From assembly GCA_964188305.1 (NCBI GenBank), contig OZ076886.1: a DNA stretch of 64,000 bases. One strand, written 5' to 3'. Position numbers and translations under genes: made by a program. The notes beneath the pieces were generated by a model that did not search any database, had not been told where the DNA came from, and was given only the letters and a program-made list of their open reading frames with translations. The stretch is from Podarcis bocagei (Eukaryota). Below, piece by piece: positions 10,604-58,287 of this stretch (position 1 is the stretch's first letter; every line of letters begins with the position of its first letter).

Positions 10604-10811
10604 TATCTAAGGCAGTGTTTCCCAACCGGTGTTCCGCGGCACAGTAGTGTGCCGCCGGACGTTGCCTAGTGTTCCGCGTGGAGGCGGCCGAGTCGGGCGG
10701 TGAGAGGCGGGGCGGCGGCGGCGAGCACACGCGGGGCTGCGAGCGAGCGAGCTCCCATATCCCATCGCCGCTCGCTACTGGCCCTGCGCATCCGCTCGCT
10801 ACTGGGCCTGC

Positions 10812-11015
10812 CCCAGGAGGTGGGGTTGCGGGGAATCCCATCCGGGGAATCCCATCCGCCCCCACGTGAGGGGGAGTCCCATCTCAGCCCCCGCGAGAGC
10901 AGGGGAATCCCATCCGGCCACGCCTCCTGGCCAGCCAATCGGCTGGCTGGAGGGGGCGTGGCTTGCCCTTTTTAGGGCCGGAGCAGAGGGGGCTCGCCCT
11001 CTCTTCTCCGGCTAG
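10812..11015 (+). promoter_or_regulatory. Promoter-like GC-rich cargo: clustered kappaB-like sites, E-box, CCAAT and GC boxes
   Basis: GGGGAATCCC at 10830, 10844 and 10902; GGGGAGTCCC at 10871; CACGTG at 10863; CCAAT at 10935; GGGGGCGTGGC at 10952. Confidence 0.5.
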
Positions 11016-11106
11016 CCCCATCGCCGCTCGCTATCGCCGCTCGCTACTGGGCCTGCGCCTGCTCGGCAAGCACACGTGGGGCGGCGAGCGAGCGAGCTCC
11101 CACATC

Positions 11107-11314
11107 TGACGGCACCAAGCAGGGGCCCTTGGCCGTGCCGGTGCCCACCGTGCCCGCCTCCGCCCAGGAGGGCGGCAAGCAGCCACCGCCACCCCCGCCG
11201 CTGCCCGGCAACCGCGCCGCCACCCCCGGCTACCCGCGGCGGGTGATCGTGCAGGCTTCGACGGGCGAGCTGCTCCGCTGCCTGGGGGACTTCGTGTGCC
11301 GCTGCTGCTACCAC
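11107..11314 (+). pseudogene. CDK5R2: Captured internal coding fragment of CDK5 activator p39
   Basis: Translates [16 protein letters not shown]...[10 protein letters not shown]...[27 protein letters not shown], matching recalled CDK5R2 ([10 protein letters not shown]; [26 protein letters not shown]). No start codon, truncated, and inside the hAT TIRs. Confidence 0.9.
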
Positions 11315-11949
11315 ATCGCCGCTCGCTACTGGGCCTGCGCGTGCGCGATCGCGCCTTCGGGATTCCCTTCAGCAGGCATCAAGCAGCCTGCCTCCCTGCT
11401 TTTTCTAATTAAGGGAACCTCCACTCTCCTGCCCCTCGGTGTTTCTCACCCCAAAGCCTTGTGGGCAGCAGGAAGTGGGGCTGTCCTGCCTCTACCCCAC
11501 GCCGGGTGGCTGCTGACACGTCCCTTGGGCAGGAGAGGCATCCGGCTGGATGAAGGCAGCGACGCCGGGGGAACGGAACAGCACGGCAGGTGTGAGTTGG
11601 CGCCTGGAAGGACACAGACTGCTTCATGTAGCTGCATTCAACAGCTCCGAGGCTGGCAGGTGAGTGCGTGCACTCCTCTCTCTCATTTTATTTAATGTGC
11701 ATTTTAGAAGCATGTGGAAATATCCTGCGTCGTCAACCACTTTGGGGAAAGTGTGCGTGTGTGTGTTTGGGGCTAGATTTCATGCATGCCTTTTTTTTTT
11801 AAGTTCTCTTCCTGCTTCATCCACATTCACCCCCCAAAAGGCCATTTTCTGTGTGCTGAATAAATTATGCAACTCAAACGGCACGAGGTGCCAATGCATC
11901 GGGGCTGTGGAATTTATTCTGCTTGCAGAATTCTGCAACTCAACCGCAT

Positions 11950-12145
11950 TTTGATGTTTAAATGTTGTATTTTTATCTTGTTTTTAAGTTATATTTCAAT
12001 CAACCTGTTTTTTATTATTGTTTTTATTTCAGTCGACTTATTTTTTATTTTTTATTATATTTCAGTCGACTTGTTTTTTAATTTGTTGTTAGCCGCCCTG
12101 AGCCCAGTCTTGGCTGGGGAGGGCGGGGTATAAATAAAATTTATT
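11950..12145 (+). mobile_element. LINE-like (L2-type) 3' tail embedded in the hAT 5' arm
   Basis: T-rich tract, then GTTAGCCGCCCTGAGCCC...GGGAGGGCGGGGTATAAATAAA. Confidence 0.5.
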
Positions 12146-12750
12146 TGGGAAAGATGGTTTAGGTATGTCCAAGCAGGCTTGATAGCAAAAACTGTTTCTC
12201 ACAAACTTAACAGCGTATACAGACAGTGGCCTTATTACAGTCTTTTTCAACCGCTGTTAGTGTTTTTCAACCTTTTTAGGTTTTCTGTAAACTGGGGAAC
12301 ACATCCATGTTGGAAGTTCAATTCCTTGCTTAGCCATGAAGCTCAATGGAAATTGCCTTGCTCTTGCCCTCTCTAATCCAGTGTTTCTCAACCGCTGTTC
12401 CGCGGCAGTGCCTCGGGGACCTCGTGGCTTCCGCTATTGCGTGTGCTGCCGTCACTCTTCCCGCCATTCCCATGTATAATTCGTGCCCGTAATACAGGCA
12501 GTAAGAACTGTTCTGTATAACGACTACCCCGCCTCTCCCACCCCATATAAGCCCATTTTTTTTCCTTTGCAGAAATGAGCCGCTGAATTGAGCTCACACA
12601 GTATGCATGTTTTTGCCTGGCTGTGATTGGTCCGGACTCAAGCCTTGACCTATCACAGTGGGACATCATCTTCCGACTTCCTTCCCGCCCGAGCACAGAG
12701 ACCAGGACCCAGCGGGAGTCGGCACCGCAGAGAGGCCGGATACTGGAGTG

Positions 12751-14631
12751 ATGGAAAAGTTTTTGAAAAGAAAAGAACTGGACTCTGAACAAAATTTGGA
12801 GCCAGATGAGAGGCCAAGTACGAGTGGGCATGAAAAGAAAGCAAAGATGGATAGCTCAAGCAAATTCTCTGTCACAAGGCAATATAGCGAAAGCTATATT
12901 TCATTTGGATTTACTTTCACCGGAGATGCAAACCAACCAACTCCACTGTGCGTGGTGTGTGGTGAAAAGCTAGCTAACAGTGCTATTGTGCCAAGCAAAC
13001 TTAAACGCCATCTCCAAACGAAACACCCTTCGCTTAAAAACAAGAATGTGGACTATTTTGTTCGCCTGCGTGAAAACACGGAGAAACAGGCAACTCTCCT
13101 GAGACAAACCTCAAAGGTAAATGAAAGAGCTCTTAAAGCTAGCTATCACGTTGCTGAACTTATAGCCAAGACAAAAAAGTCGCACACTGTGGCAGAGACA
13201 TTAATACTTCCCGCCTGCAAAGCTATTGTGGAGGAGATGCTCGGACCTGAAGCAGCTAAGGAAATAGCCAAGGTCCCTCTCTCAAACAACACAATTTCCA
13301 GACGTATTGATGACATGTCTGCAGACATTGAAAGTGTGGTTTTGGAAAAGATCCATAGTAGTGAGAAATTTGCATTACAACTGGACGAGTCTACTGATAT
13401 CAGTGGACATGCTCAACTCTTGGCCAATGTGCGTTTTGTTGATGGTGATGCAATTAGAGAAAACTTCTTTTTCTGCAAGGCATTGCCAGAAAAAGCAACA
13501 GGAGAAGAAATTTTTCGGGTCACATCAGAATACCTTGAACAAGGAGGACTTAAGTGGGAAAACTGCATAAGTGTCTGCACCGATGGAGCTGCAGCCATGG
13601 TCGGGCACACCAAAGGCTTTGTAAGCAGAGTGAAGGAAAGAAATCCAAATGTTATTGTTACGCATTGTTTTTTGCACCGTGAGACCCTCGTAGCCAAGAC
13701 TCTACCAGCAGACCTAGTTCATGTGTTGGATGATGTTGTGCGCATGGTAAACTTTGTAAAGTCACGACCCGTGAAAAGTCGCATATTTGCAGCCTTGTGT
13801 GAGGAGATGGGAGCGAAGCATAAAACCTTGCTGTTTCATACGGAGGTCCGGTGGTTGTCGCGTGGCAAGGTCTTGGTTCGTGTGTATGAGCTGCGGGAGG
13901 AACTTAAAGTGTTTCTGACAAATGAGAGGACAGATTACGCAAAGCTGCTTGCAAGTGATGAATGGTGTGCAAGGCTGGCATACCTGGCAGATATATTTCA
14001 TCATCTGAATGAACTGAACACACGAATGCAAGGCCGAAATGAAAACCTGCTTACAAGTACAGATAAAATAAATGGATTCCGTGCAAAGCTGCAACTCTGG
14101 CATCAACACGTGGAAAGTGGCAATCTTGAAATGTTCACACTCACCAAGCAATGGCAAGGTGTTCACACTGCTGCACTGTGTGAGATAATAGCTAAACATT
14201 TAAAAACTCTCGAGGGGAAGTTGTCATTTTATTTCTCTTCAGTCTCCACTGAATGCCTTGACTGGGTTAGGGACCCTTATAGCTCAGCATCAGTTGGTGG
14301 AAAGGACATGACTTTACAGGAGCAGGAGGAACTAACTGAACTGAGACAAAATCGTGGTTTCAAGCTAAGATTTGCTGATCTACCTTTGGACAGTTTTTGG
14401 TTGGAAACTGCCAAGGAGTTCCCCCTTCTGGCAAACAAAGCTATTTTGACATTGCTCCCATTTTCCACTACATATCTCTGTGAGTTGAGCTTTTCAAGCA
14501 TGATTGCTATAAAAACTAAATACAGAGAGAGACTGAGAGCTGTTGACGAAGAGCTACGTGTGTGTCTTTCTTCGATTCCAGCCAGAATATCAGCTTTGTG
14601 TTCAGCCAAACAGGCCCAGGTTGCGCACTGA
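12751..14631 (+). CDS. hAT transposase, Buster/Charlie family (ZBED5/SCAND3/FAM200-like), 626 aa from first ATG
   Basis: Uninterrupted ORF with BED zinc finger (CVVC...HLQTKH), catalytic D (QLDEST), D (CTDGA), CxxH (HCFLH), RW (VRWLS) and catalytic E in the C-terminal region (YLCELSFS). The ORF track starts at a GTG at 12658; the first ATG is at 12751. Confidence 0.95.
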
Positions 14632-15190
14632 ATCAAGTATTTTATAATTTTTCATATTTCTGTTTACTTACCATTTCATAATAAAGTAATTATAAAATAC
14701 TTTCTTTGTGTTTATTTGATTCCTATTAAAGAGAGTTACTTTATATATAGTCAATATAGGCAAAGAGTTAATTTTTAAAACATTTTCTAATGGTGGTGTG
14801 CCTCGAGATTTTTTTCATGAAACAAGTGTGCCTTTGCCCAAAAAAGGTTGGGAAACACTGATCTAAGGGGCTGTCACATGGAAGATGGAGCAAGCTTGTT
14901 TTTTCCTGCTCTGGAGGCTAGGACTGGAACCAATGGCTTCAAATTACAAGAAAGGAGATTCCCACTAAACATCAGAAAGAACTTTATGATGATAAGAGCT
15001 GTTTGACAGTGGAACAGACTCCCAGGAGAGGTGGTGGACTCTCCTTTATTGGAGGTTTTAAAGCAGAGGATCTGCCTTAGATGCTTTAGTTGAGATTCCT
15101 GCATTACAGGGGGTTGGACCAACTCTATAATTCTCTGATTCAATGAAAACAACAATGATGTTTAAACATCCAATACAGTTACAGAATCTA

Positions 15191-48269: not shown

Positions 48270-49010
48270 ATTTTTTTTTTAAAAAAAGATTTTCTTGTTT
48301 TATAGAAGTTTGTGCAATGTCTCTCGTATTTTTCCCATGTTACATTTTTACAAATCAGTTTCATTTGTTGAGACATTAGGGGGAAATAAGGGGTGGAGGG
48401 GTGGGGGAAGATGGGTGGGGGTGGGGGTGGGGTCGGGTAGCGATGTTTCTATTTTGCTTAATGTATGTAGGGTTTGGTGTCAGCGTTGCTTGTGCAGGTT
48501 CTCTGCTGTTCATTTGTGTTTCTTTGGTGGTGAGAGAGGTTGGGGTTGGCCTAGGGTGTGGTTGTTTGCTTGTGATTGGCTATAGTGATCTTTGTTTTCG
48601 TGTGTGAGTGGGGTGGGTGGGTGTTTTGGATCAGGTTAGCCATATTGATTTGTATGCTGTTGGTGGATTATTGTCATTGTCTTGTTGGGTTGTGTATGTG
48701 ATAAAGGGGAGCCATACCGGGGTAAAAGCGTCTTCTTCTGTTTGTCCCTGTGTCATTTTCAGTTTATTGGTTGATTTTACTAGTAGGACTGTTTCCCATA
48801 CTATTTGGTACCATTGGTCCATGCTTACTCCTGACAGGTCTCTCCAGTGTCTGGTTATGGTGTTTCTGGCTGCTGAAAGTAGGTGGGGTATGAGTTTCCT
48901 GAGGACTCTGATGAATGTGATGAGTGGGAAGAAGAGGGCATGGATCAGAACCCACCCACCCAAGCTTTTTCAGCTGGGACTTTCTGTTGAAACTGTGGGA
49001 ATGTTCAGGG
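48270..49010 (-). mobile_element. Degenerate L1-type LINE 3' fragment
   Basis: Minus-strand peptide LLSAARNTITRHWRD...QWYQIVWE...VWLPFITY resembles an ORF2 C-terminus, followed by a 3' UTR and an A-rich tail. Boundaries approximate. Confidence 0.6.
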
Positions 49011-49535
49011 AGGCAGGAGAGGATATATTGTTTAATTATATCCTTCCCAACTTGTGTTAACAAGTTCTACAATATAGCAGAGTAACATTCCCCTTTTTAA
49101 ACTTGCACAGTGGATGTCTTTGCCTGGCTTGTATAAACCTCTAAAATAAGTTTCCTTGGTAATTCCCCTTTATTCCCTCATAAAAAGATAGACAAAACAC
49201 AGTCTTGTATAAAAGTATATAAAATAGTTTACTCACATTCTGTTCACAAATGGATCCCAGAAGGCAGACTTAAGTTACAAAATATATACACCTAGAATCT
49301 ATCTCAGTGTTTCCCAACCGGTGTTCCGCGGCACACTAGTGTGCCGCGAGACATTGCCTGGTGTGCCGCGGGAGGGAGGCGGGCGAGTCGGGAGGTGAGA
49401 GGAGAGGCCGCCCAGCGCGGGGCTCTCGCCGTCTGCCTGCCTGGCTGCCTGCGTGGCGCTGACGTCCCGGGGCTGTAACGTGCCCCACATAGGCACACGC
49501 GGGGCGGCGAGCGAGCTCCCTCCCACATCCCATCG

Positions 49536-49915
49536 CCGGCTCTGCACCAGGCGGTAGAGCTCGGCGAAGTCGCCGCGCTGGAAGGCCAGCAGCGCGCGCG
49601 CCTTGGCCAGGCTCTCGCCCGCCTGCGCCTCCAGGCAGGGCGCCTCGGCGTCAGGCGGCAGCGAGCCCAGGAAGCGGCTCAGCCGGTCGGGGTCGCCCGC
49701 CTGCAGCAGCGCCTCGCACACGCACGAGACCTGCTCCGCTGAGAAGCGCGGCGAGCGTGGAGGATCGGGCGCGGCGGAGGCTAGCCCCGCGCTTGGAGAG
49801 GACGCAGCAGCCGTCGCCAAACCCGATCCTCCTCCTCCTGCTCCGCCGCCGTCCTCTGGCTCTCGGCCGGGAGGAGCCTGCGGCGACAGGGCGGGCGCCG
49901 AAGTTGGCAGAAGTT
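49536..49915 (-). pseudogene. SIX5: Captured SIX5 exon-1 fragment A (first part of the SIX domain)
   Basis: Translates PRFSAEQVSCVCEALLQAGDPDRLSRFLGSLPP...ARALLAFQRGDFAELYRLVQSR, matching recalled SIX5 (RFSPEQVACVCEALLQAG...RLSRFLGALPP...ARALVAFQRGEYAELYRLLESR). Truncated; no homeodomain. Confidence 0.9.
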
Positions 49916-50113
49916 ACGCTACGCCACTGCCTAGGACTCAAGCCGTCACCTGGCTTGTCGTCGTTGCTTTACTTTCCGGGCGGAAAGACAGGAGGGTTGA
50001 TCATCTTGCTGGAGTCTGGGCTGCTTAGCGTCGCCCCAGGAAAAGTTTGCTCGGGAGGAGGGGAGCCGCGCGGAATTCAAGCGCGCGCGCTTCCGTGCCT
50101 CGCGCAGCGCAAC

Positions 50114-50126
50114 TTTGCGCGGGAAA
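50114..50126. promoter_or_regulatory. E2F binding site in the captured E2F5 upstream region
   Basis: TTTGCGCGGGAAA contains the canonical TTTCCCGC on the minus strand, ~420 bp upstream of the E2F5 ATG. Confidence 0.55.
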
Positions 50127-50541
50127 TGTCCCCGAGTGAGTGAAAACACCACTGCCGGGCACTTCGAAGGCCCCTTTTTCACCCTCCCCGCCCCGTTTGC
50201 TGCTTCGTTTCCCCCCGGGGGCGAGAGAGGGGCGCAACCACCCCGCAACTCTCTCCCCTCAGGCTCCACCTTCTCGGGAAAGGAGCAGCTGCCCCCTTTC
50301 CTCTGGCTCTTCCCTACACAAAACTTTGTCTCCCGGCAACTGCGCGGGCGGCGTCACTTCCTCTCCCTGCAGGCCAGCCGGCGGTGGGCGAGAAAAGGAC
50401 GAGGGCTCGCTCTTGTGTCTCCGCGGGGCAGCTGCTCCGCGCGGGGACCAGCCGGGCTCCCTCGCGGCCGGAGGAAGGGCAAGCCCGGGGGGGAGAGGGC
50501 CACGTGGGGCCGCCGGAGGAGGTGGGTGGGGGGGATGCAGC

Positions 50542-50733
50542 ATGGCCGCGGTGGCGCTGCCCGAGTCGGTTTCCAGTAGCCATGGCGGCGGCGTGGGGAG
50601 CCTGGAAGGCGGTGCGGGCACCGGGGGCGCCAGCAGCAACAGCAGCCGGCATGAGAAGAGCCTGGGGCTGCTCACCACCAAGTTCGTGTCCCTCCTGCAG
50701 GAGGCCAAGGACGGCGTGCTCGACCTGAAAGCG
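50542..50733 (+). pseudogene. E2F5: Captured E2F5 coding exon 1, with upstream promoter/5' UTR and downstream intron-1 start
   Basis: MAAVALP...[31 protein letters not shown], followed by the donor GCG|GTGAGG at 50734. SSRHEK and LDLKA fit E2F5 rather than E2F4 (PSRHEK, LDLKL). No exon 2 seen in the window. Confidence 0.88.
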
Positions 50734-51003
50734 GTGAGGGGGAGGTGGGGGGCTTGGGTCCAGGCGCTGCGGGTGGGATCCGGGCGCGGAGGGAGGGGCG
50801 TGCATGTGCGTGTGTGTGTGAGACACACACACACACAACGTGGGGTGCGATGGCCCTTGAGGGATCCAGCGGGAGGATCTCTGGACTGGGATCTGGTGAG
50901 GGGAAAAGTTCCATGTTGGGAGTAGGCACCTTTTTAATAACCCACCCCTTTTCTTCAGGCTTTGGCGTATGTGGTTTTGCTGCCTGCCTGGCTGCCTGCC
51001 TGC

Positions 51004-51299
51004 GAGAAGCGCGGCGAGCGCGGAGGATCGGGCGCCCCGGAGGCCAGCCCCGCGCTTGGAGAGGACGCAGCAGCCGTCGCCAAACCCGATCCTCCTCCTC
51101 CTGCTCCGCCGCCGTCCTCTGGCTCTCGGCCGGGAGGAGCCTGCGGCGACGGGGCGGGCGCCGAAGTTGGCAGAAGTTGGCGCGCCTCCTCGGCAGCGCC
51201 TTCGTCCTCCTCCTCCTGCCTCTGCTCTCCTCCGGCAGCGGGGGCGTGCCGTCCTCCCCGGCCGGGGGGCTCGGCGGGGCCCGCGGGGAAGGAGGCCAT
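51004..51299 (-). pseudogene. SIX5: Captured SIX5 exon-1 fragment B (start codon and N-terminus); GC-rich sequence above 51299 is probably its 5' UTR
   Basis: ATG at 51299 gives MASFPAGPAEP...PAAGGE...EEEDEGAAEEARQLL...PRFS, resembling recalled SIX5 N-terminus (MATLPAEP...PAAGGE...EEEEEEARQLL). 51004-51178 duplicates 49741-49915. Confidence 0.85.
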
Positions 51300-54162
51300 G
51301 TTCACGGCGCACGGGATCGCGGCCCCCCTCGCCCACCTCCGGCCCCTTCCCCTCCCCCTGCGCGCTGCCCTAGCCGTGCGGGTCTCCTCCCCCTGCGGCG
51401 CAGTCCCCTTTCCACATCCTAGGAGCCGCGGTCCGCCTTCCGCCCCCGGGCCGCGGCGCGGCTCCCAGCCCGGGCTGGCCTCTGCCTCCTGGGACGCGTG
51501 CCCACCCCCGCGGCCCCCCAAACTTCGGAGCAACTCTCCAGACGCTTCTCCCCCGCCTCGGTCTCCCTCCTTTCCACTTCTCTTCCCCCCTTCCTTCCCT
51601 CTTTCTTTTTCTCTCCCACCCGTCTTTCCTTCTATTAACTTTCCTTTCCCCTTCCCATGTAGAACAGTCCCTGCAAATAAAAACCTAGCATATTTGGAAG
51701 AGGGATGCTAGCCTAACCATTACCTTCTATGCTGTTACTATTTTTTTTTTTTTTTTTACATAAGTAAAAAGTGACCTTTCCCCATCTGGCATGGTGGTGT
51801 GCCTCGAGATTTTTTACATGAAACAAGTGTGCCTTTGCCCAAAAAAGGTTGGGAAACACTGATCTATCTCATAAGGAGATAGTTCTTTTGTCCTCTCTTG
51901 GCTGCAAGCTAAGGCTAAGAAGATGTTGCTTCTTCGAGGAATGGAGTCAGAGAGAGAGATGGCTGCCTCCGCTGAGGTATTTTGTTACCTGCATAGGTGA
52001 GGTCACACCCACCTCTGGTCACATGTAGAAGAAGTCTGTCCCAGCCCAGGAGGAAACAGGAAGTTCTGACTGGCTGGTCCAGACATCCCCTTTTATGTCC
52101 ACTCTAGGAATGTTATATTTGACTGCTCTGTGTTTCACATCCCACAGAAACCTTGGAGGCTCCCTCTTCTTCAACTCAGGATGAGGAGGCAGGCTAGGGG
52201 ACAGGAGGAAGCCCATAGCACTGTTTGAGCTGTCAGGGGAAGAGGACAGCTAGGCATTGTCTCCGAGACAACTAGGAGGCTACATTAGCTTCTTTTATTT
52301 TCCCCATCTAACTACTATTTACCTTGCTGTTCTGTGAGTGGGAAGCTGGCTGAACCCCTGTCTGAAATCCAGGAGAGATGCTGATATGATAGTCAGTGCA
52401 GACAATATGGAGTTAGATGGACCAATGGTCTGACTCAGTGTAAGGCAGTTTCCTATGTTGTACCCAGAAAGTTCTGAGAATGAGTGTTGGTCTCTAATAC
52501 AACCTTGCACTTCAAACCCCTTCCGTATATGGAATTCCAAGCAGGCAAGTGAGAGGACAGAAAGAGGAGAGGCGGAGTGCTCCATTCCTCATCCACTAGG
52601 CCACTTTGTTTCTGTCACTTCCTCTGCCGCTAGGACAGACATGCCGTGGGCTGATAGAAGGCCTTAAAAAAAATGGCATTAGCCTATTAATAGGCTAGTA
52701 GCCGCCATTTCCAATCTGCCACTAAAAGAGGGAGTTTCCTCTGTCCTGTGGCTAGCCTGGAAATTCAGGCTATTAGCCTGTTAGTAGGATAGTTATTTAC
52801 TTGTTTATGTATTGCTGGCTAGCAGCTTTTGTGGGCTTGTTTACAAAAGCTGCTGTCATAAAAGCAAAACAACCAAGCTGATCAAAACATTTTTTTTCCA
52901 GATATGTTAAATAGCCCTGAAAAAATGAAGGTTAGGAAGGATAAAGTATTTGCTCAGTATTTGCTCATTCTTTTCTGCCCTGCTTATTTGCATAAATTGG
53001 GCTTCTTAGCACAATTTGCATAATCAGGCATGTAGTGTACAGCCTCTAGTCCTCCAGGCTAATTTGTATGCTTAAAGAAGCATTTTTTTTAATCAATCTG
53101 TTGATTATGCATATGAACCTAGTGAATTGTGACTGCAAAATCCATCTGGACAAAGGGACACGGAAATGAACACTTTCCTTCTGTATAAGATTCATTCTCC
53201 CAAACCAGCAATTGTCACTGTGAGATATCTTAGGTACTCCTATGTCTATAAAAGTCCATTTTTATATTTTGCTCAGACTTTTCATCGTACAGCTGTGTAG
53301 CTTTCTTTATTGCTTAATTTTATTGGTTCATATCTAATGGGAACTTCTAGTTCTCAAATTTAGCTTGGCATTTATGTTTGTTTTTTAAAATGATTTTTAT
53401 TAACAATATTCTTGGTTAATGTATGTATATTTGTGTCTGTGTGTCCATGTTGTTGTAGTGACTCTTTTAAGCGGTGGGTGAAAGAAATTAGTAAATGTCA
53501 GTGGCTAACTTGTCCCAGCTCAATAAAACTGCCCTGCCCTGCTTGCTACATGAAAGGAGGTGGTAGGTTTTGAGCAAAACTGGGCACTCAAAAGAAGCCA
53601 AAATATGCTGCTAAAATATTCACAGTGCTCTGACAGCATTTTCACTTGTTTGCCTAATTTCTGTATTAATTTCCTGCAGAGTGTAGGAGAAGAAAATTTA
53701 ACTTTATGAGAAAGACAGGATGTCTTTTACACTTGCAACCCCTTTATCCTGGAAGCCTTTGCTGCTGTGAATGCTTGAGATCGATCCTGGGATCTTCTGG
53801 CATGCTAGGCTTGTGTCACAGGCCTGAGATGCTCTCTTGTCTCCCTTTCCATGCTAAAGTACACAACTATTGCTAGGGCTAGAATGATAAATCTCTAGAT
53901 CTGTGCTTGGGTGACTTGTGGTAAGCCACTGTAGCAGAATTACAAGTGTCTGAGCATCCTAACAAAGGGACAAGGTATTCTGTGGAGATAGCATCTCAGG
54001 GTCACATGCCAGTAGAGTGGAGAAACATTCAATTCACCTGAATGTAGTTAACTAAAAGTGGGCAATGAAAGCGGTTAGGTGCTAGCCTGTGAGGCAGCTA
54101 AACCAAGTTGGTTCAGCTACTTTGTTAAAGAGTTCAGGCCTTGAGTTAAAGTCAAGATTTCT

Positions 54163-57652: not shown

Positions 57653-58287
57653 TTTTTTAAAAAAAATTTTTTTAAATTCAAAATTAAAACAAGACATATT
57701 ATCCAAAAACATATCATCCTTGTCCCCCCCCCATTTTTCCTCCCTCCCCCCTCCCACACAAAACCCAACCGCCCCCAGTTCCAGTCTTTGGTTTCTCTGA
57801 GACTGCTGTTTTCTGCATGTTACAAAGTTGTATAGATCCTCAAACTATTTAGCTGATTATTATCAATAAAAAGTTTGTGAATGTTTATTCAAAACCTGTC
57901 AAGGAGTCCAGTTCACTTTGTTGCATCTTCAGATACTTTGTAAAGGGTTCCCATTCATCCTTAAAGTCACAGTTATCATTGTCCTGTAGCTTATATGTCA
58001 GTTTTGCCAGTTCTGCATAGTCGGTCAATTTTTCTTGCCATGATTCTTTAGTTGGCGTTTCTTCCATCTTCCATCCTTGTGCTGCCAGAACTCTCGCGGC
58101 TGTTGTTGCATACATGAAGATGTTTTTCAGCTTTTTTGGCAGGTCTTTCCCTACAATCCCCAACAAAAATGCCTCGGTTTTTTTTAACAAATGTTAAAAC
58201 ATTTTCTTCAATTCATTGTATATCATTTCCCAAAAATGTTTAATTACATTACAATCCCACCACATATGATAATATGATCTTATCATA
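57653..58287 (-). mobile_element. 5'-truncated L1-type LINE
   Basis: ORF2 C-terminus-like peptide (HMWWDC...FW...FLLGI...TTAARVLAAQGWK...W...W..F), A-rich tail, and a 17-bp TSD TTAGATCAGGGATGTCC at 57636-57652 and 58288-58304. Confidence 0.85.

What the first reader, a model, noticed from the sequence alone, without database searches (positions are those of the whole stretch)
49305..51861. One 2.56-kb element joins fragments of two different transcription-factor genes in opposite orientations
Seen order: TIR, SIX5 piece A (minus), E2F5 promoter, exon 1 and intron start (plus), SIX5 piece B with start codon and upstream sequence (minus), TIR. The result is a portable CpG island in otherwise AT-rich DNA. 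Inference: several template switches during gap repair, or serial captures. Transcription from the E2F5 promoter would be antisense to SIX5, and the reverse, so the element could produce antisense or small RNAs against the parent genes.
Basis: partly seen in the sequence, partly recalled or inferred. Interest (0 to 1): 0.85.

Follow-up and report, generated by a model that had tools for sequence, protein, structure and literature searches.

The report
Transposon carrying two captured gene starts
A 2.56-kb non-autonomous hAT DNA transposon in a Podarcis-type lizard genome carries the CpG-island 5' ends of two unlinked transcription-factor genes, SIX5 and E2F5, picked up one after the other; it is a clean vertebrate case of the known "Pack-TIR" gene capture, and nothing yet shows that it has a function.

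Summary
Window 49305-51861 is bounded by perfect 15-bp inverted ends and an 8-bp target duplication (ATCTATCT). Its ends match a second element of the same hAT family in the window (10613-14860), which has an intact 626-aa transposase ORF.

The interior is host DNA:
- An 883-bp piece of SIX5 (upstream region, ATG, start of the SIX domain) lies on the minus strand. It is split in two, with a 176-bp overlap.
- Between the halves lies 1,059 bp of E2F5 (about 620 bp upstream, exon 1, splice donor, 248 bp of intron) on the plus strand.

In three Podarcis genomes, SIX5 and E2F5 sit on different chromosomes.

A P. muralis gene model (P0133) reads straight through an uninterrupted SIX5-only copy with the same cargo/backbone junction. 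The SIX5 cargo has 3.3% private changes and the E2F5 cargo 0.6% (P = 1e-5). So capture was serial: SIX5 first, E2F5 later. The E2F5 step used template switches and left a filler copied from elsewhere in the element.

The block meets CpG-island criteria (CpG o/e 0.74-1.0; flanks 0.15-0.17). This is a new member of the known Pack-TIR kind. First-stage notes of this scan report SIX5-carrying hAT copies elsewhere in this genome.

The parts
49297..49304 (.). Left target-site duplication ATCTATCT
   Evidence: Read directly; identical 8-mer at 51862-51869.
49305..49411 (+). Left end of the hAT backbone, including the 15-nt terminal inverted repeat at 49305-49319
   Evidence: 86% identical over 107 bp to the left end of the transposase-bearing element at 10613-10716. 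TIR pair I9 is 100% complementary.
49412..49492 (.). Segment X, 81 bp, source unknown. It is GC-rich and is the template of the later filler.
   Evidence: Absent from the element at 10613. Present in the P. muralis SIX5-only copy, as read through P0133. 49433-49455 is copied at 50980-51002.
49493..49538 (+). First half of subterminal motif M, the family's capture hot spot
   Evidence: 89% identical to 10725-10770 and to 11070-11106. The intact motif folds as a DNA hairpin, -27.3 kcal/mol, z = -2.7.
49539..49915 (-). SIX5 piece A: codons about 42-134 of SIX5 exon 1 (N-terminal region and start of the SIX domain), ending at ...LVQSR
   Evidence: Pfam SIX1_SD 1.2e-15. 92.9-96.9% identical to Podarcis SIX5 loci L004, L005 and L006. 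Named SIX5 hits.
49916..49922 (.). Junction J1: 7-10 nt with no identified template, between SIX5 A and E2F5
   Evidence: Alignments to three parental E2F5 loci start at 49923-49926. The 14-mer across the junction is unique in the window.
49923..50541 (+). E2F5 upstream/promoter region, about 620 bp
   Evidence: Collinear with L001 9378-10000 and the equivalent parts of L002 and L003. CpG o/e 0.80.
50542..50733 (+). E2F5 exon-1 coding part, 64 codons, intact.
   Evidence: Peptide 100% identical to P. lilfordi E2F5 residues 1-64. Nearly all top named hits are E2F5. Pfam E2F_TDP 1.9e-4.
50734..50981 (+). E2F5 intron 1, first 248 bp, starting with the GT donor
   Evidence: Collinear with the intron of the three Podarcis E2F5 loci. 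Homology stops at 50981.
50982..51002 (+). Templated filler at junctions J2/J3. It is a copy of part of segment X; the 23-mer at 50980-51002 shares its first 2 nt with the E2F5 intron.
   Evidence: 22/23 match to 49433-49455 (family D7). The 20-mer core is found only at these two places, 0 expected.
51003..51299 (-). SIX5 piece B, coding part: ATG at 51299 to codon 98/99. 51003-51178 duplicates 49740-49915.
   Evidence: Translation; alignments.
51300..51655 (-). SIX5 upstream (5' UTR/promoter) region, 356 bp
   Evidence: Collinear with L004 5635-6000, L005 and L006. CpG o/e 0.92.
51656..51790 (.). AT-rich 135 bp of unknown origin. Its last 40 bp are a degenerate repeat of the right subterminal region.
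   Evidence: No match to the parents or to the other element. Family D4. No CpG.
51791..51861 (-). Right end of the hAT backbone, including the TIR at 51847-51861
   Evidence: 98.6% identical over 71 bp to 14790-14860.
51862..51869 (.). Right target-site duplication ATCTATCT
   Evidence: Read directly.
10613..14860 (+). Putative autonomous partner: a same-family element with an intact 626-aa transposase ORF (12751-14628), its own cargo and TSD ATCTAAGG

Best explanation
The stretch is a non-autonomous hAT transposon of the 'Pack-TIR' (Pack-hAT) type. It keeps only about 150 bp of left-end and 70 bp of right-end backbone; the rest is host DNA.

Step 1 (older; shown). An 883-bp block of the SIX5 CpG island (promoter, ATG, first ~134 codons) was copied into the element. 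The join lies inside a hairpin-forming subterminal motif, at a 4-nt microhomology. This SIX5-only form spread: an uninterrupted copy with the identical junction sits at another locus in P. muralis.

Step 2 (recent; structure shown, process inferred). While a SIX5-carrying copy was being re-synthesised, the nascent strand left the SIX5 cargo at 49915 and copied 1,059 bp of the unlinked E2F5 CpG island (promoter, exon 1, start of intron 1). It then copied 21-23 nt from segment X of the element and re-entered the SIX5 cargo 176 bp behind the point where it had left. This left a 176-bp direct duplication. The re-synthesis was most likely gap repair after excision, or else a stalled-fork template switch.

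Result. The product is a 2.3-kb CpG-island-like block in CpG-poor DNA, with two promoters that face each other. It encodes only truncated peptides: 98 SIX5 codons plus a junk tail, and 64 E2F5 codons. It is most likely a neutral by-product of an apparently still active transposon family.

Not known:
- whether the two-gene form arose at this site or moved here;
- whether it is transcribed.
For: Transposon identity:
- Perfect TIRs and an 8-bp TSD.
- Ends shared with an element encoding an intact ZBED5/FAM200-like hAT transposase.

Cargo identity and parents:
- SIX5. E2F5.
- The parents lie on different chromosome records in three Podarcis assemblies.
- Promoter and intron are included, so the capture was of DNA, not mRNA.

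Serial order:
- P0133 aligns without interruption across piece B, the overlap, piece A, motif M, segment X, the left backbone and the TIR, then runs into a different flank.
- SIX5 cargo has 27 private changes in 819 sites; E2F5 cargo has 6 in 1,034 (Fisher P = 1e-5).
- The two regions evolve at similar rates among the three species.

Template switching:
- The 176-bp duplication.
- The filler copied from 49433-49455.
- A 2-nt (CT) overlap at the E2F5/filler junction.

Hot-spot motif:
- Cargo junctions of both elements fall in the same motif, which folds as a hairpin with z = -2.7.

Recurrent capture by the family:
- A CDK5-activator fragment in the other element (Pfam 1.7e-8).

Known kind:
- Pack-TIRs are described in 100 animal genomes. 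hAT is the commonest carrier, and the multicopy ones tend to capture high-GC regions (PMC8277862).
Against: - No read data could be laid. The internal junctions therefore rest on this assembly alone, apart from 65-70% of sampled 31-mers being held by two runs of one sample of the same organism, X1 and X2.
- No second copy of the two-gene form was found, so its mobility is unproven.
- The window's own parental loci were not available. Breakpoints and ages are judged against three congeners.
- The two 176-bp repeats differ by 5 events, more than the young E2F5 cargo predicts (P about 0.004-0.06). A and B may therefore come from two different SIX5-carrying copies.
- The local Pfam copy did not recognise a hAT catalytic or dimerisation domain in the transposase. 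Assignment rests on the TSD length and on feature similarity (score 0.99) to ZBED5/FAM200 clusters.
Confidence: 0.8

Rival explanations
1. One-step origin: SIX5 piece A, E2F5 and SIX5 piece B were all acquired in a single multi-template repair event. On this view there was never a SIX5-only ancestor of this copy.
For: All junctions look like template switches.
Against: An uninterrupted SIX5-only copy with the identical SIX5/backbone junction and segment X exists in P. muralis. SIX5 cargo is about five times more diverged than E2F5 cargo (P = 1e-5). First-stage notes report further SIX5-carrying copies in this genome; these are unchecked.
Confidence: 0.05
2. Working mobile regulatory unit: the captured CpG islands stay unmethylated and active. 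The convergent E2F5 and SIX5 promoters then give overlapping sense and antisense RNA, and hence small RNAs that act on the parent genes or drive nearby transcription.
For: - CpG-island criteria are met, and 120 of 135 parental SIX5 CpGs are kept.
- CpG sites changed only about 1.6 times as often as other sites, although the flanks are at o/e 0.15. This hints at low germline methylation.
- The promoters converge.
- 'RNA?' runs of a related organism hold 29-36% of the element's 31-mers.
- Antisense Pack-TIR transcripts are known in human (PMC8277862).
Against: - No transcript, small-RNA or methylation data could be examined.
- The 'RNA?' label is a guess, and those words may come from the parent genes.
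- Piece A carries 3 CpG transitions in 176 bp, as methylated DNA would.
- Most Pack-TIRs are transcribed, if at all, from host promoters (PMC8277862).
Confidence: 0.08
3. Transposase-independent origin of the E2F5 insert: a replication-fork collapse or double-strand break inside a resident SIX5 element at this very site was repaired by microhomology-mediated template switching. No excision was involved, and the two-gene form has never moved.
For: - Only one copy of the two-gene form is known.
- Tan et al. conclude that most single-copy animal Pack-TIRs arise without transposition (PMC8277862).
- GC-rich, hairpin-prone sequence is a plausible stalling site.
Against: The sequence alone cannot separate this from excision-gap repair, since both give the same product. 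The donor E2F5 is on another chromosome, whereas the transposition-independent cases show a bias towards parents nearby on the same chromosome. The family looks active, with an intact ORF and perfect TIRs and TSDs.
Confidence: 0.3
4. Assembly artefact: GC-rich reads from SIX5, E2F5 and a hAT element were wrongly joined.
For: GC-rich repeats are hard to assemble, and no reads could be laid.
Against: - TIRs and TSD are perfect.
- The junction carries a filler templated from inside the same element, and the duplication is orderly at 176 bp.
- Both cargos carry private substitutions relative to all parents.
- Two runs of one sample of the same organism hold 65% of the element's sampled words, against about 76% for the flanks.
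Confidence: 0.03

Closest known systems
Pack-TIR / Pack-hAT elements of metazoans (Tan et al. 2021, PMC8277862)
   Same: - A TIR DNA transposon with TSD whose interior is a DNA-level copy of host gene fragments.
- hAT is the commonest carrier superfamily.
- Origin by template switching during gap filling or fork stalling.
- The multicopy cases have distant parents and tend to capture high-GC regions.
   Different: - Cargo comes from two unlinked genes, acquired serially. My term searches of that paper found no multi-parent case.
- The cargos are whole CpG-island promoters plus first exons.
- The same family shows repeated captures at one subterminal hairpin motif, and an intact transposase lies 35 kb away.
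- My term searches for 'lizard' and 'Anolis' in that paper's main text found nothing; the species list itself was not read.
Pack-MULEs of rice and other plants (e.g. PMC5861414)
   Same: - Preferential duplication of GC-rich gene 5' parts.
- A sharp local GC rise at the insertion site.
- Chimeras of several genes in one element; this point is from memory (Jiang et al. 2004).
- Possible antisense and small-RNA output.
   Different: - A different superfamily (Mutator; 9-11-bp TSD, long TIRs) in plants.
- Thousands of copies.
- Expression and epigenetic state are documented there and are not documented here.
Ds-type derivatives of Ac formed by abortive gap repair with filler DNA (maize hAT; from memory: Rubin and Levy 1997; Yan et al. 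1999)
   Same: hAT family. Internal rearrangements with short templated fillers and microhomologies at the junctions, explained by interrupted synthesis-dependent repair of the excision gap.
   Different: Those mostly delete or reshuffle element sequence. Here more than 1 kb of ectopic host DNA was copied in, with a 176-bp duplication.
Vertebrate CpG islands
   Same: Length over 200 bp, GC over 50% and CpG o/e over 0.6 across 49305-51655. The block consists of two bona fide parental promoter islands.
   Different: Ectopic and transposon-borne. The unmethylated state, the biological hallmark, was not tested.

Membership tests
hAT superfamily, non-autonomous member | 8-bp target-site duplication | tested here: met
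   ATCTATCT at 49297-49304 and 51862-51869. The sister element has ATCTAAGG on both sides.
hAT superfamily, non-autonomous member | Short terminal inverted repeats shared with an autonomous element | tested here: met
   15-nt perfect TIR. Left 107 bp are 86% and right 71 bp are 98.6% identical to the ends of the element at 10613-14860.
hAT superfamily, non-autonomous member | The partner encodes a hAT transposase (RNase-H-like DDE core with inserted domain, C-terminal dimerisation region) | tested here: inconclusive
   The 626-aa ORF is intact. Atlas feature score is 0.99 to ZBED5-like, FAM200 and GTF2IRD2-like clusters, which carry hAT-derived Pfam families. The local Pfam copy gave only zf-C2H2_12 at 1.6e-4, and there was no PDB hit. 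Catalytic residues were not examined.
hAT superfamily, non-autonomous member | No transposase of its own | tested here: met
   Only the ends match the transposase-bearing element. The interior is accounted for by SIX5, E2F5 and fillers, apart from 216 bp of unknown source.
Pack-TIR (transduplicating TIR transposon) | The internal sequence is a copy of host gene DNA that resides elsewhere | tested here: met
   E2F5 block of 1,059 bp and SIX5 block of 883 bp are collinear with the parental loci of three Podarcis species. The own-species parents were not available.
Pack-TIR (transduplicating TIR transposon) | DNA-level capture, not retroposition | tested here: met
   Upstream, non-coding promoter DNA and 248 bp of intron after an intact GT donor are included. 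The only A/T run, a T-run at about 51742-51758, lies in the unassigned AT-rich segment.
Pack-TIR (transduplicating TIR transposon) | Multicopy, i.e. mobilised after capture | tested here: inconclusive
   The SIX5-only form exists at another locus in P. muralis (P0133). First-stage notes report it elsewhere in this genome, unchecked. No second copy of the two-gene form was found; exact-protein look-ups were blank.
CpG island | At least 200 bp, GC at least 0.5, CpG observed/expected at least 0.6 | tested here: met
   By segment, GC is 0.60-0.76 and o/e 0.74-1.1, except the intron part at 0.56. The whole element is at 0.67 and 0.83.
CpG island | Unmethylated in germline and soma | not testable with these tools
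   No methylation data were available. The only indirect hint is the modest excess of CpG decay, about 1.6-fold.
Antisense / small-RNA-producing transduplicate | Element-specific sense and antisense transcripts or small RNAs | not testable with these tools

The most novel reading that the evidence does not exclude
Podarcis lizards harbour a currently active hAT family that habitually copies whole CpG-island promoters with first exons (SIX5, E2F5, a CDK5-activator gene and others). It does so at a hairpin in its subterminal region and scatters them through the genome. The scattered islands stay unmethylated. In this two-gene element, the convergent promoters give double-stranded RNA that feeds back on SIX5 and E2F5.
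Probability: 0.07. Interest if true: 0.8.

Novelty: new member of a known kind. Interest (0 to 1): 0.5.

Why it matters
Gene capture by cut-and-paste transposons is well documented in plants. In animals it is known mostly as rare, single-copy, old events, and only four multicopy cases were reported across 100 genomes (PMC8277862). This window shows several things side by side, with junctions fresh enough to read the repair steps:
- a vertebrate family with an intact transposase;
- repeated captures at one structured motif;
- a cargo that spread (SIX5);
- a second, much younger capture stacked on the first (E2F5).

That makes the family a natural system for two questions: how template switching builds Pack elements, and whether CpG islands keep their chromatin state when moved. 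For the biology of SIX5 and E2F5 themselves, nothing is shown.

Tried and rejected
Steps that gave no result:
As a result there is no depth, junction, empty-site, strandedness or expression evidence. After that call no letters of 50653-50726 were sent to any search tool. Everything covering them was done before it.
- The search for homologous proteins with the 192-aa junction ORF gave nothing, because low-complexity words swamped the candidates.
- Exact-product look-ups for four junction or backbone ORFs and for the transposase were blank. P0001 was also not on record.
- The search of earlier findings by sequence was blank.
- One literature search was spoiled because 'hat' matched 'hatch'.
- A whole-word search found no paper on hAT gene capture in Podarcis.

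Readings rejected:
- Nested insertion of one transposon in another. There are no internal TIRs and no 8-bp duplication around the E2F5 block.
- Retrocopy. Promoter and intron are present.
- SIX4 instead of SIX5. The named best hits are SIX5.
- E2F4 instead of E2F5. Nearly all top hits are E2F5, and the lineage-specific N-terminus matches.
- Two independent SIX5 captures. A and B are collinear parts of one 883-bp parental block with a 176-bp overlap, and P0133 shows them joined.

Full report
**1. What is there**

The stretch 49305-51861 begins and ends with the 15-nt motif CAGTGTTTCCCAACC in inverted orientation, 100% complementary (pair I9). It is flanked by the same 8-mer, ATCTATCT, at 49297-49304 and 51862-51869. 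The motif occurs five times in the 64-kb window against 0.09 expected. The other three occurrences belong to a 4.2-kb element at 10613-14860 with its own 8-bp duplication, ATCTAAGG.

That second element holds an uninterrupted 626-codon ORF at 12751-14628. The ORF's nearest protein clusters are 'ZBED5-like', FAM200 and GTF2IRD2-like, which are hAT-transposase-derived families (score 0.99). The local Pfam copy saw only a zinc finger.

The finding's element shares with it the left 107 bp (86%), a 46-bp subterminal motif (89%) and the right 71 bp (98.6%), and nothing else. An 8-bp duplication, short TIRs and ends shared with a transposase-bearing element make this a non-autonomous hAT element.

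**2. The cargo**

*E2F5, plus strand.*
- 49923-50981 aligns in one block with the 5' end of the E2F5 locus of P. muralis (L001), P. lilfordi (L002) and P. raffonei (L003) at 93-96%.
- The block covers about 620 bp upstream, the 64-codon coding part of exon 1 (ATG 50542), the GT donor at 50734 and 248 bp of intron.
- The peptide is identical to P. lilfordi E2F5 residues 1-64, including the lineage-specific N-terminus. The best named hits are E2F5.

*SIX5, minus strand.*
- 51003-51655 and 49535-49915 align with the SIX5 locus of P. raffonei (L004), P. muralis (L005) and P. lilfordi (L006) at 92-97%.
- Together the two pieces equal one contiguous 883-bp parental block: 356 bp upstream, the ATG (51299) and about 134 codons, ending in the SIX domain at ...LVQSR.
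- Pfam gives SIX1_SD at 1.2e-15. The nearest named full-length proteins are SIX5 of snake, tuatara, marsupial and Podarcis.
- The two pieces overlap: 49740-49915 repeats 51003-51178 (family D1).

The host is a lacertid lizard of or very near the genus Podarcis.

**3. The two genes are not neighbours**

| Assembly | E2F5 | SIX5 |
|---|---|---|
| P. muralis | OZ076961.1, 28.5 Mb | OZ076960.1, 84.6 Mb |
| P. lilfordi | OX395132.1 | OX395133.1 |
| P. raffonei | CM049756.1 | CM049757.1 |

In each of the three assemblies the genes lie on different chromosome records. The window's own species could not be checked.

**4. Order of events**

- A P. muralis gene model, P0133 (UniRef A0A670I980), turned up as the best hit of the SIX5 piece (7e-64).
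- It is a translation straight through another copy of this element. It aligns without a break to piece B, the overlap, piece A, the junction '...LVQSR/RWDVGG', segment X, the left backbone and the TIR ('RGTPVGKH'). It then continues into a flank unlike ours.
- So a SIX5-only form, with the same capture junction, exists at another locus in another genome.
- Where the three parental sequences agree, the SIX5 cargo has 27 private changes in 819 sites (3.3%). The E2F5 cargo has 6 in 1,034 (0.6%), no more than a species' own branch (Fisher P = 1e-5).
- The two regions evolve at similar rates among the species.
- SIX5 was therefore captured first and spread. E2F5 was added to one SIX5-carrying copy much later.

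**5. How the E2F5 piece got in (inferred from the junctions)**

- The original SIX5 junction lies in subterminal motif M, where 'gccg' is common to motif and gene.
- In the sister element the intact motif folds as a DNA hairpin (-27.3 kcal/mol, z = -2.7). Its own two cargo blocks, one of them a CDK5-activator fragment (Pfam 1.7e-8), are also inserted within copies of that motif. This agrees with first-stage note s1-345169.
- The later event has three junctions:
  - SIX5 to E2F5 at 49915/49923, with 7-10 nt of unassigned filler.
  - E2F5 intron to a 21-23-nt copy of 49433-49455, with a 2-nt overlap. The 20-mer is found nowhere else in the window.
  - That filler back into SIX5, 176 bp behind the exit point.
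- Short templated fillers, microhomologies and a back-step duplication are the signature of interrupted, template-switching repair synthesis. This is the mechanism proposed for hAT Ds formation (from memory) and for Pack-TIRs (gap filling or 'FoSTeST', PMC8277862).
- The sequence cannot tell whether the trigger was an excision gap or a stalled fork, or whether this happened at this site.

**6. CpG-island character**

- Every cargo segment has GC 0.60-0.76 and CpG o/e 0.74-1.0. The intron part is at 0.56 and the flanks at 0.15-0.17.
- The SIX5 cargo keeps 120 of 135 parental CpGs. CpG sites changed about 1.6 times as often as other sites. That is far less than the flanks' depletion would suggest for methylated DNA.
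- This is a weak hint, on small numbers, that the moved island stayed largely unmethylated in the germline.
- Against it, piece A has three CpG transitions within the 176-bp overlap.
- Pack-MULEs in rice likewise copy GC-rich gene parts and cause a sharp local GC step (PMC5861414).

**7. Function**

- The E2F5 promoter points right and the SIX5-B promoter points left.
- The coding potential is only truncated: a 114-codon ORF (98 SIX5 codons plus a junk tail) and E2F5 exon 1.
- No nearby host exons were seen. The neighbourhood is CpG-poor with LINE remnants.
- Runs guessed to be RNA from a related organism hold 29-36% of the element's sampled 31-mers.
- After I worked beside those places and sent none of their letters to any search tool.
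- My estimate: neutral by-product about 0.8; some transcription plausible; a regulatory effect on the parent genes below 0.1.

**8. Comparison and verdict**

- This is a member of the Pack-TIR kind described for animals by Tan et al. (PMC8277862). There, hAT is the commonest carrier, multicopy cases are rare (4) and tend to capture high-GC regions, and antisense transcripts are noted in two human cases.
- What this case adds:
  - two unlinked parents stacked by serial capture;
  - whole promoter-plus-first-exon islands as cargo;
  - a shared capture hot spot;
  - an intact putative transposase in the same window;
  - junctions young enough to read.
- I found no paper on this in Podarcis.
- First-stage notes of this scan report SIX5-carrying and other CpG-island-carrying hAT copies elsewhere in this genome (s1-333321, s1-352228, s1-333346, s1-359597, s1-347494). 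I could not check those directly, but P0133 is independent support for the SIX5-only form.
- Unexplained:
  - The 5 differences between the two 176-bp repeats.
  - The SIX5 cargo resembles the P. lilfordi allele, while the E2F5 cargo is nearest P. muralis.
  - The source of segment X and of the AT-rich 135 bp.

Noticed in passing
window 10613-14860: A second element of the same hAT family, with TSD ATCTAAGG and an intact 626-aa ZBED5/FAM200-like transposase ORF (12751-14628). It is composite: an outer left end at 10613 and a second, internal left end at 12379 (1 mismatch) just upstream of the ORF.
   Followed up: partly
window 10725-11340: Cargo blocks alternate with halves of subterminal motif M. 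10800-11010 looks like a promoter (CCAAT and GC boxes). 11107-11310 is a CDK5-activator (CDK5R-like) coding fragment (Pfam PF03261, 1.7e-8). The intact motif at 10716-10800 folds as a DNA hairpin (z = -2.7).
   Followed up: partly
window 50113-50126: A private A>G change at 50123 in the E2F5 cargo turns the parental GCGGAAAA into GCGGGAAA, a perfect E2F-site core (consensus recalled from memory). The motif is part of a palindromic TTTGCGCGGGAAA in the captured promoter.
   Followed up: no
window 49740-49915 vs 51003-51178: The two copies of the SIX5 overlap differ by 5 events: 4 derived in piece A (3 of them CpG transitions) and a CC>GG dinucleotide change in piece B. This is more than the young E2F5 cargo predicts, so the pieces may come from two different SIX5-carrying copies.
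   Followed up: partly
window 49535-49915 and 51003-51655; L004-L006: The SIX5 cargo, and also the copy read through P0133 in P. muralis, share indel states with the P. lilfordi SIX5 allele. The E2F5 cargo is nearest P. muralis E2F5. Possible causes are an old capture, ancestral polymorphism or introgression.
   Followed up: no
window 48631-48963 (-) and 57885-58190 (-): ORF fragments that look like the C-terminal part of LINE ORF2, judged by eye. The element sits in CpG-poor, repeat-derived DNA with no recognisable host exon within several kb.
   Followed up: no
both TSDs (49297-49304, 10605-10612): Both target duplications begin ATCTA (ATCTATCT, ATCTAAGG). This may reflect a target preference of the family.
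   Followed up: no
runs X15-X18, X25-X28: Assemblies guessed to be RNA, from a related organism, hold 29-36% of the element's sampled 31-mers. That is almost as much as that organism's DNA runs (42-44%). Either the cargo copies are transcribed there or the label is wrong.
   Followed up: no
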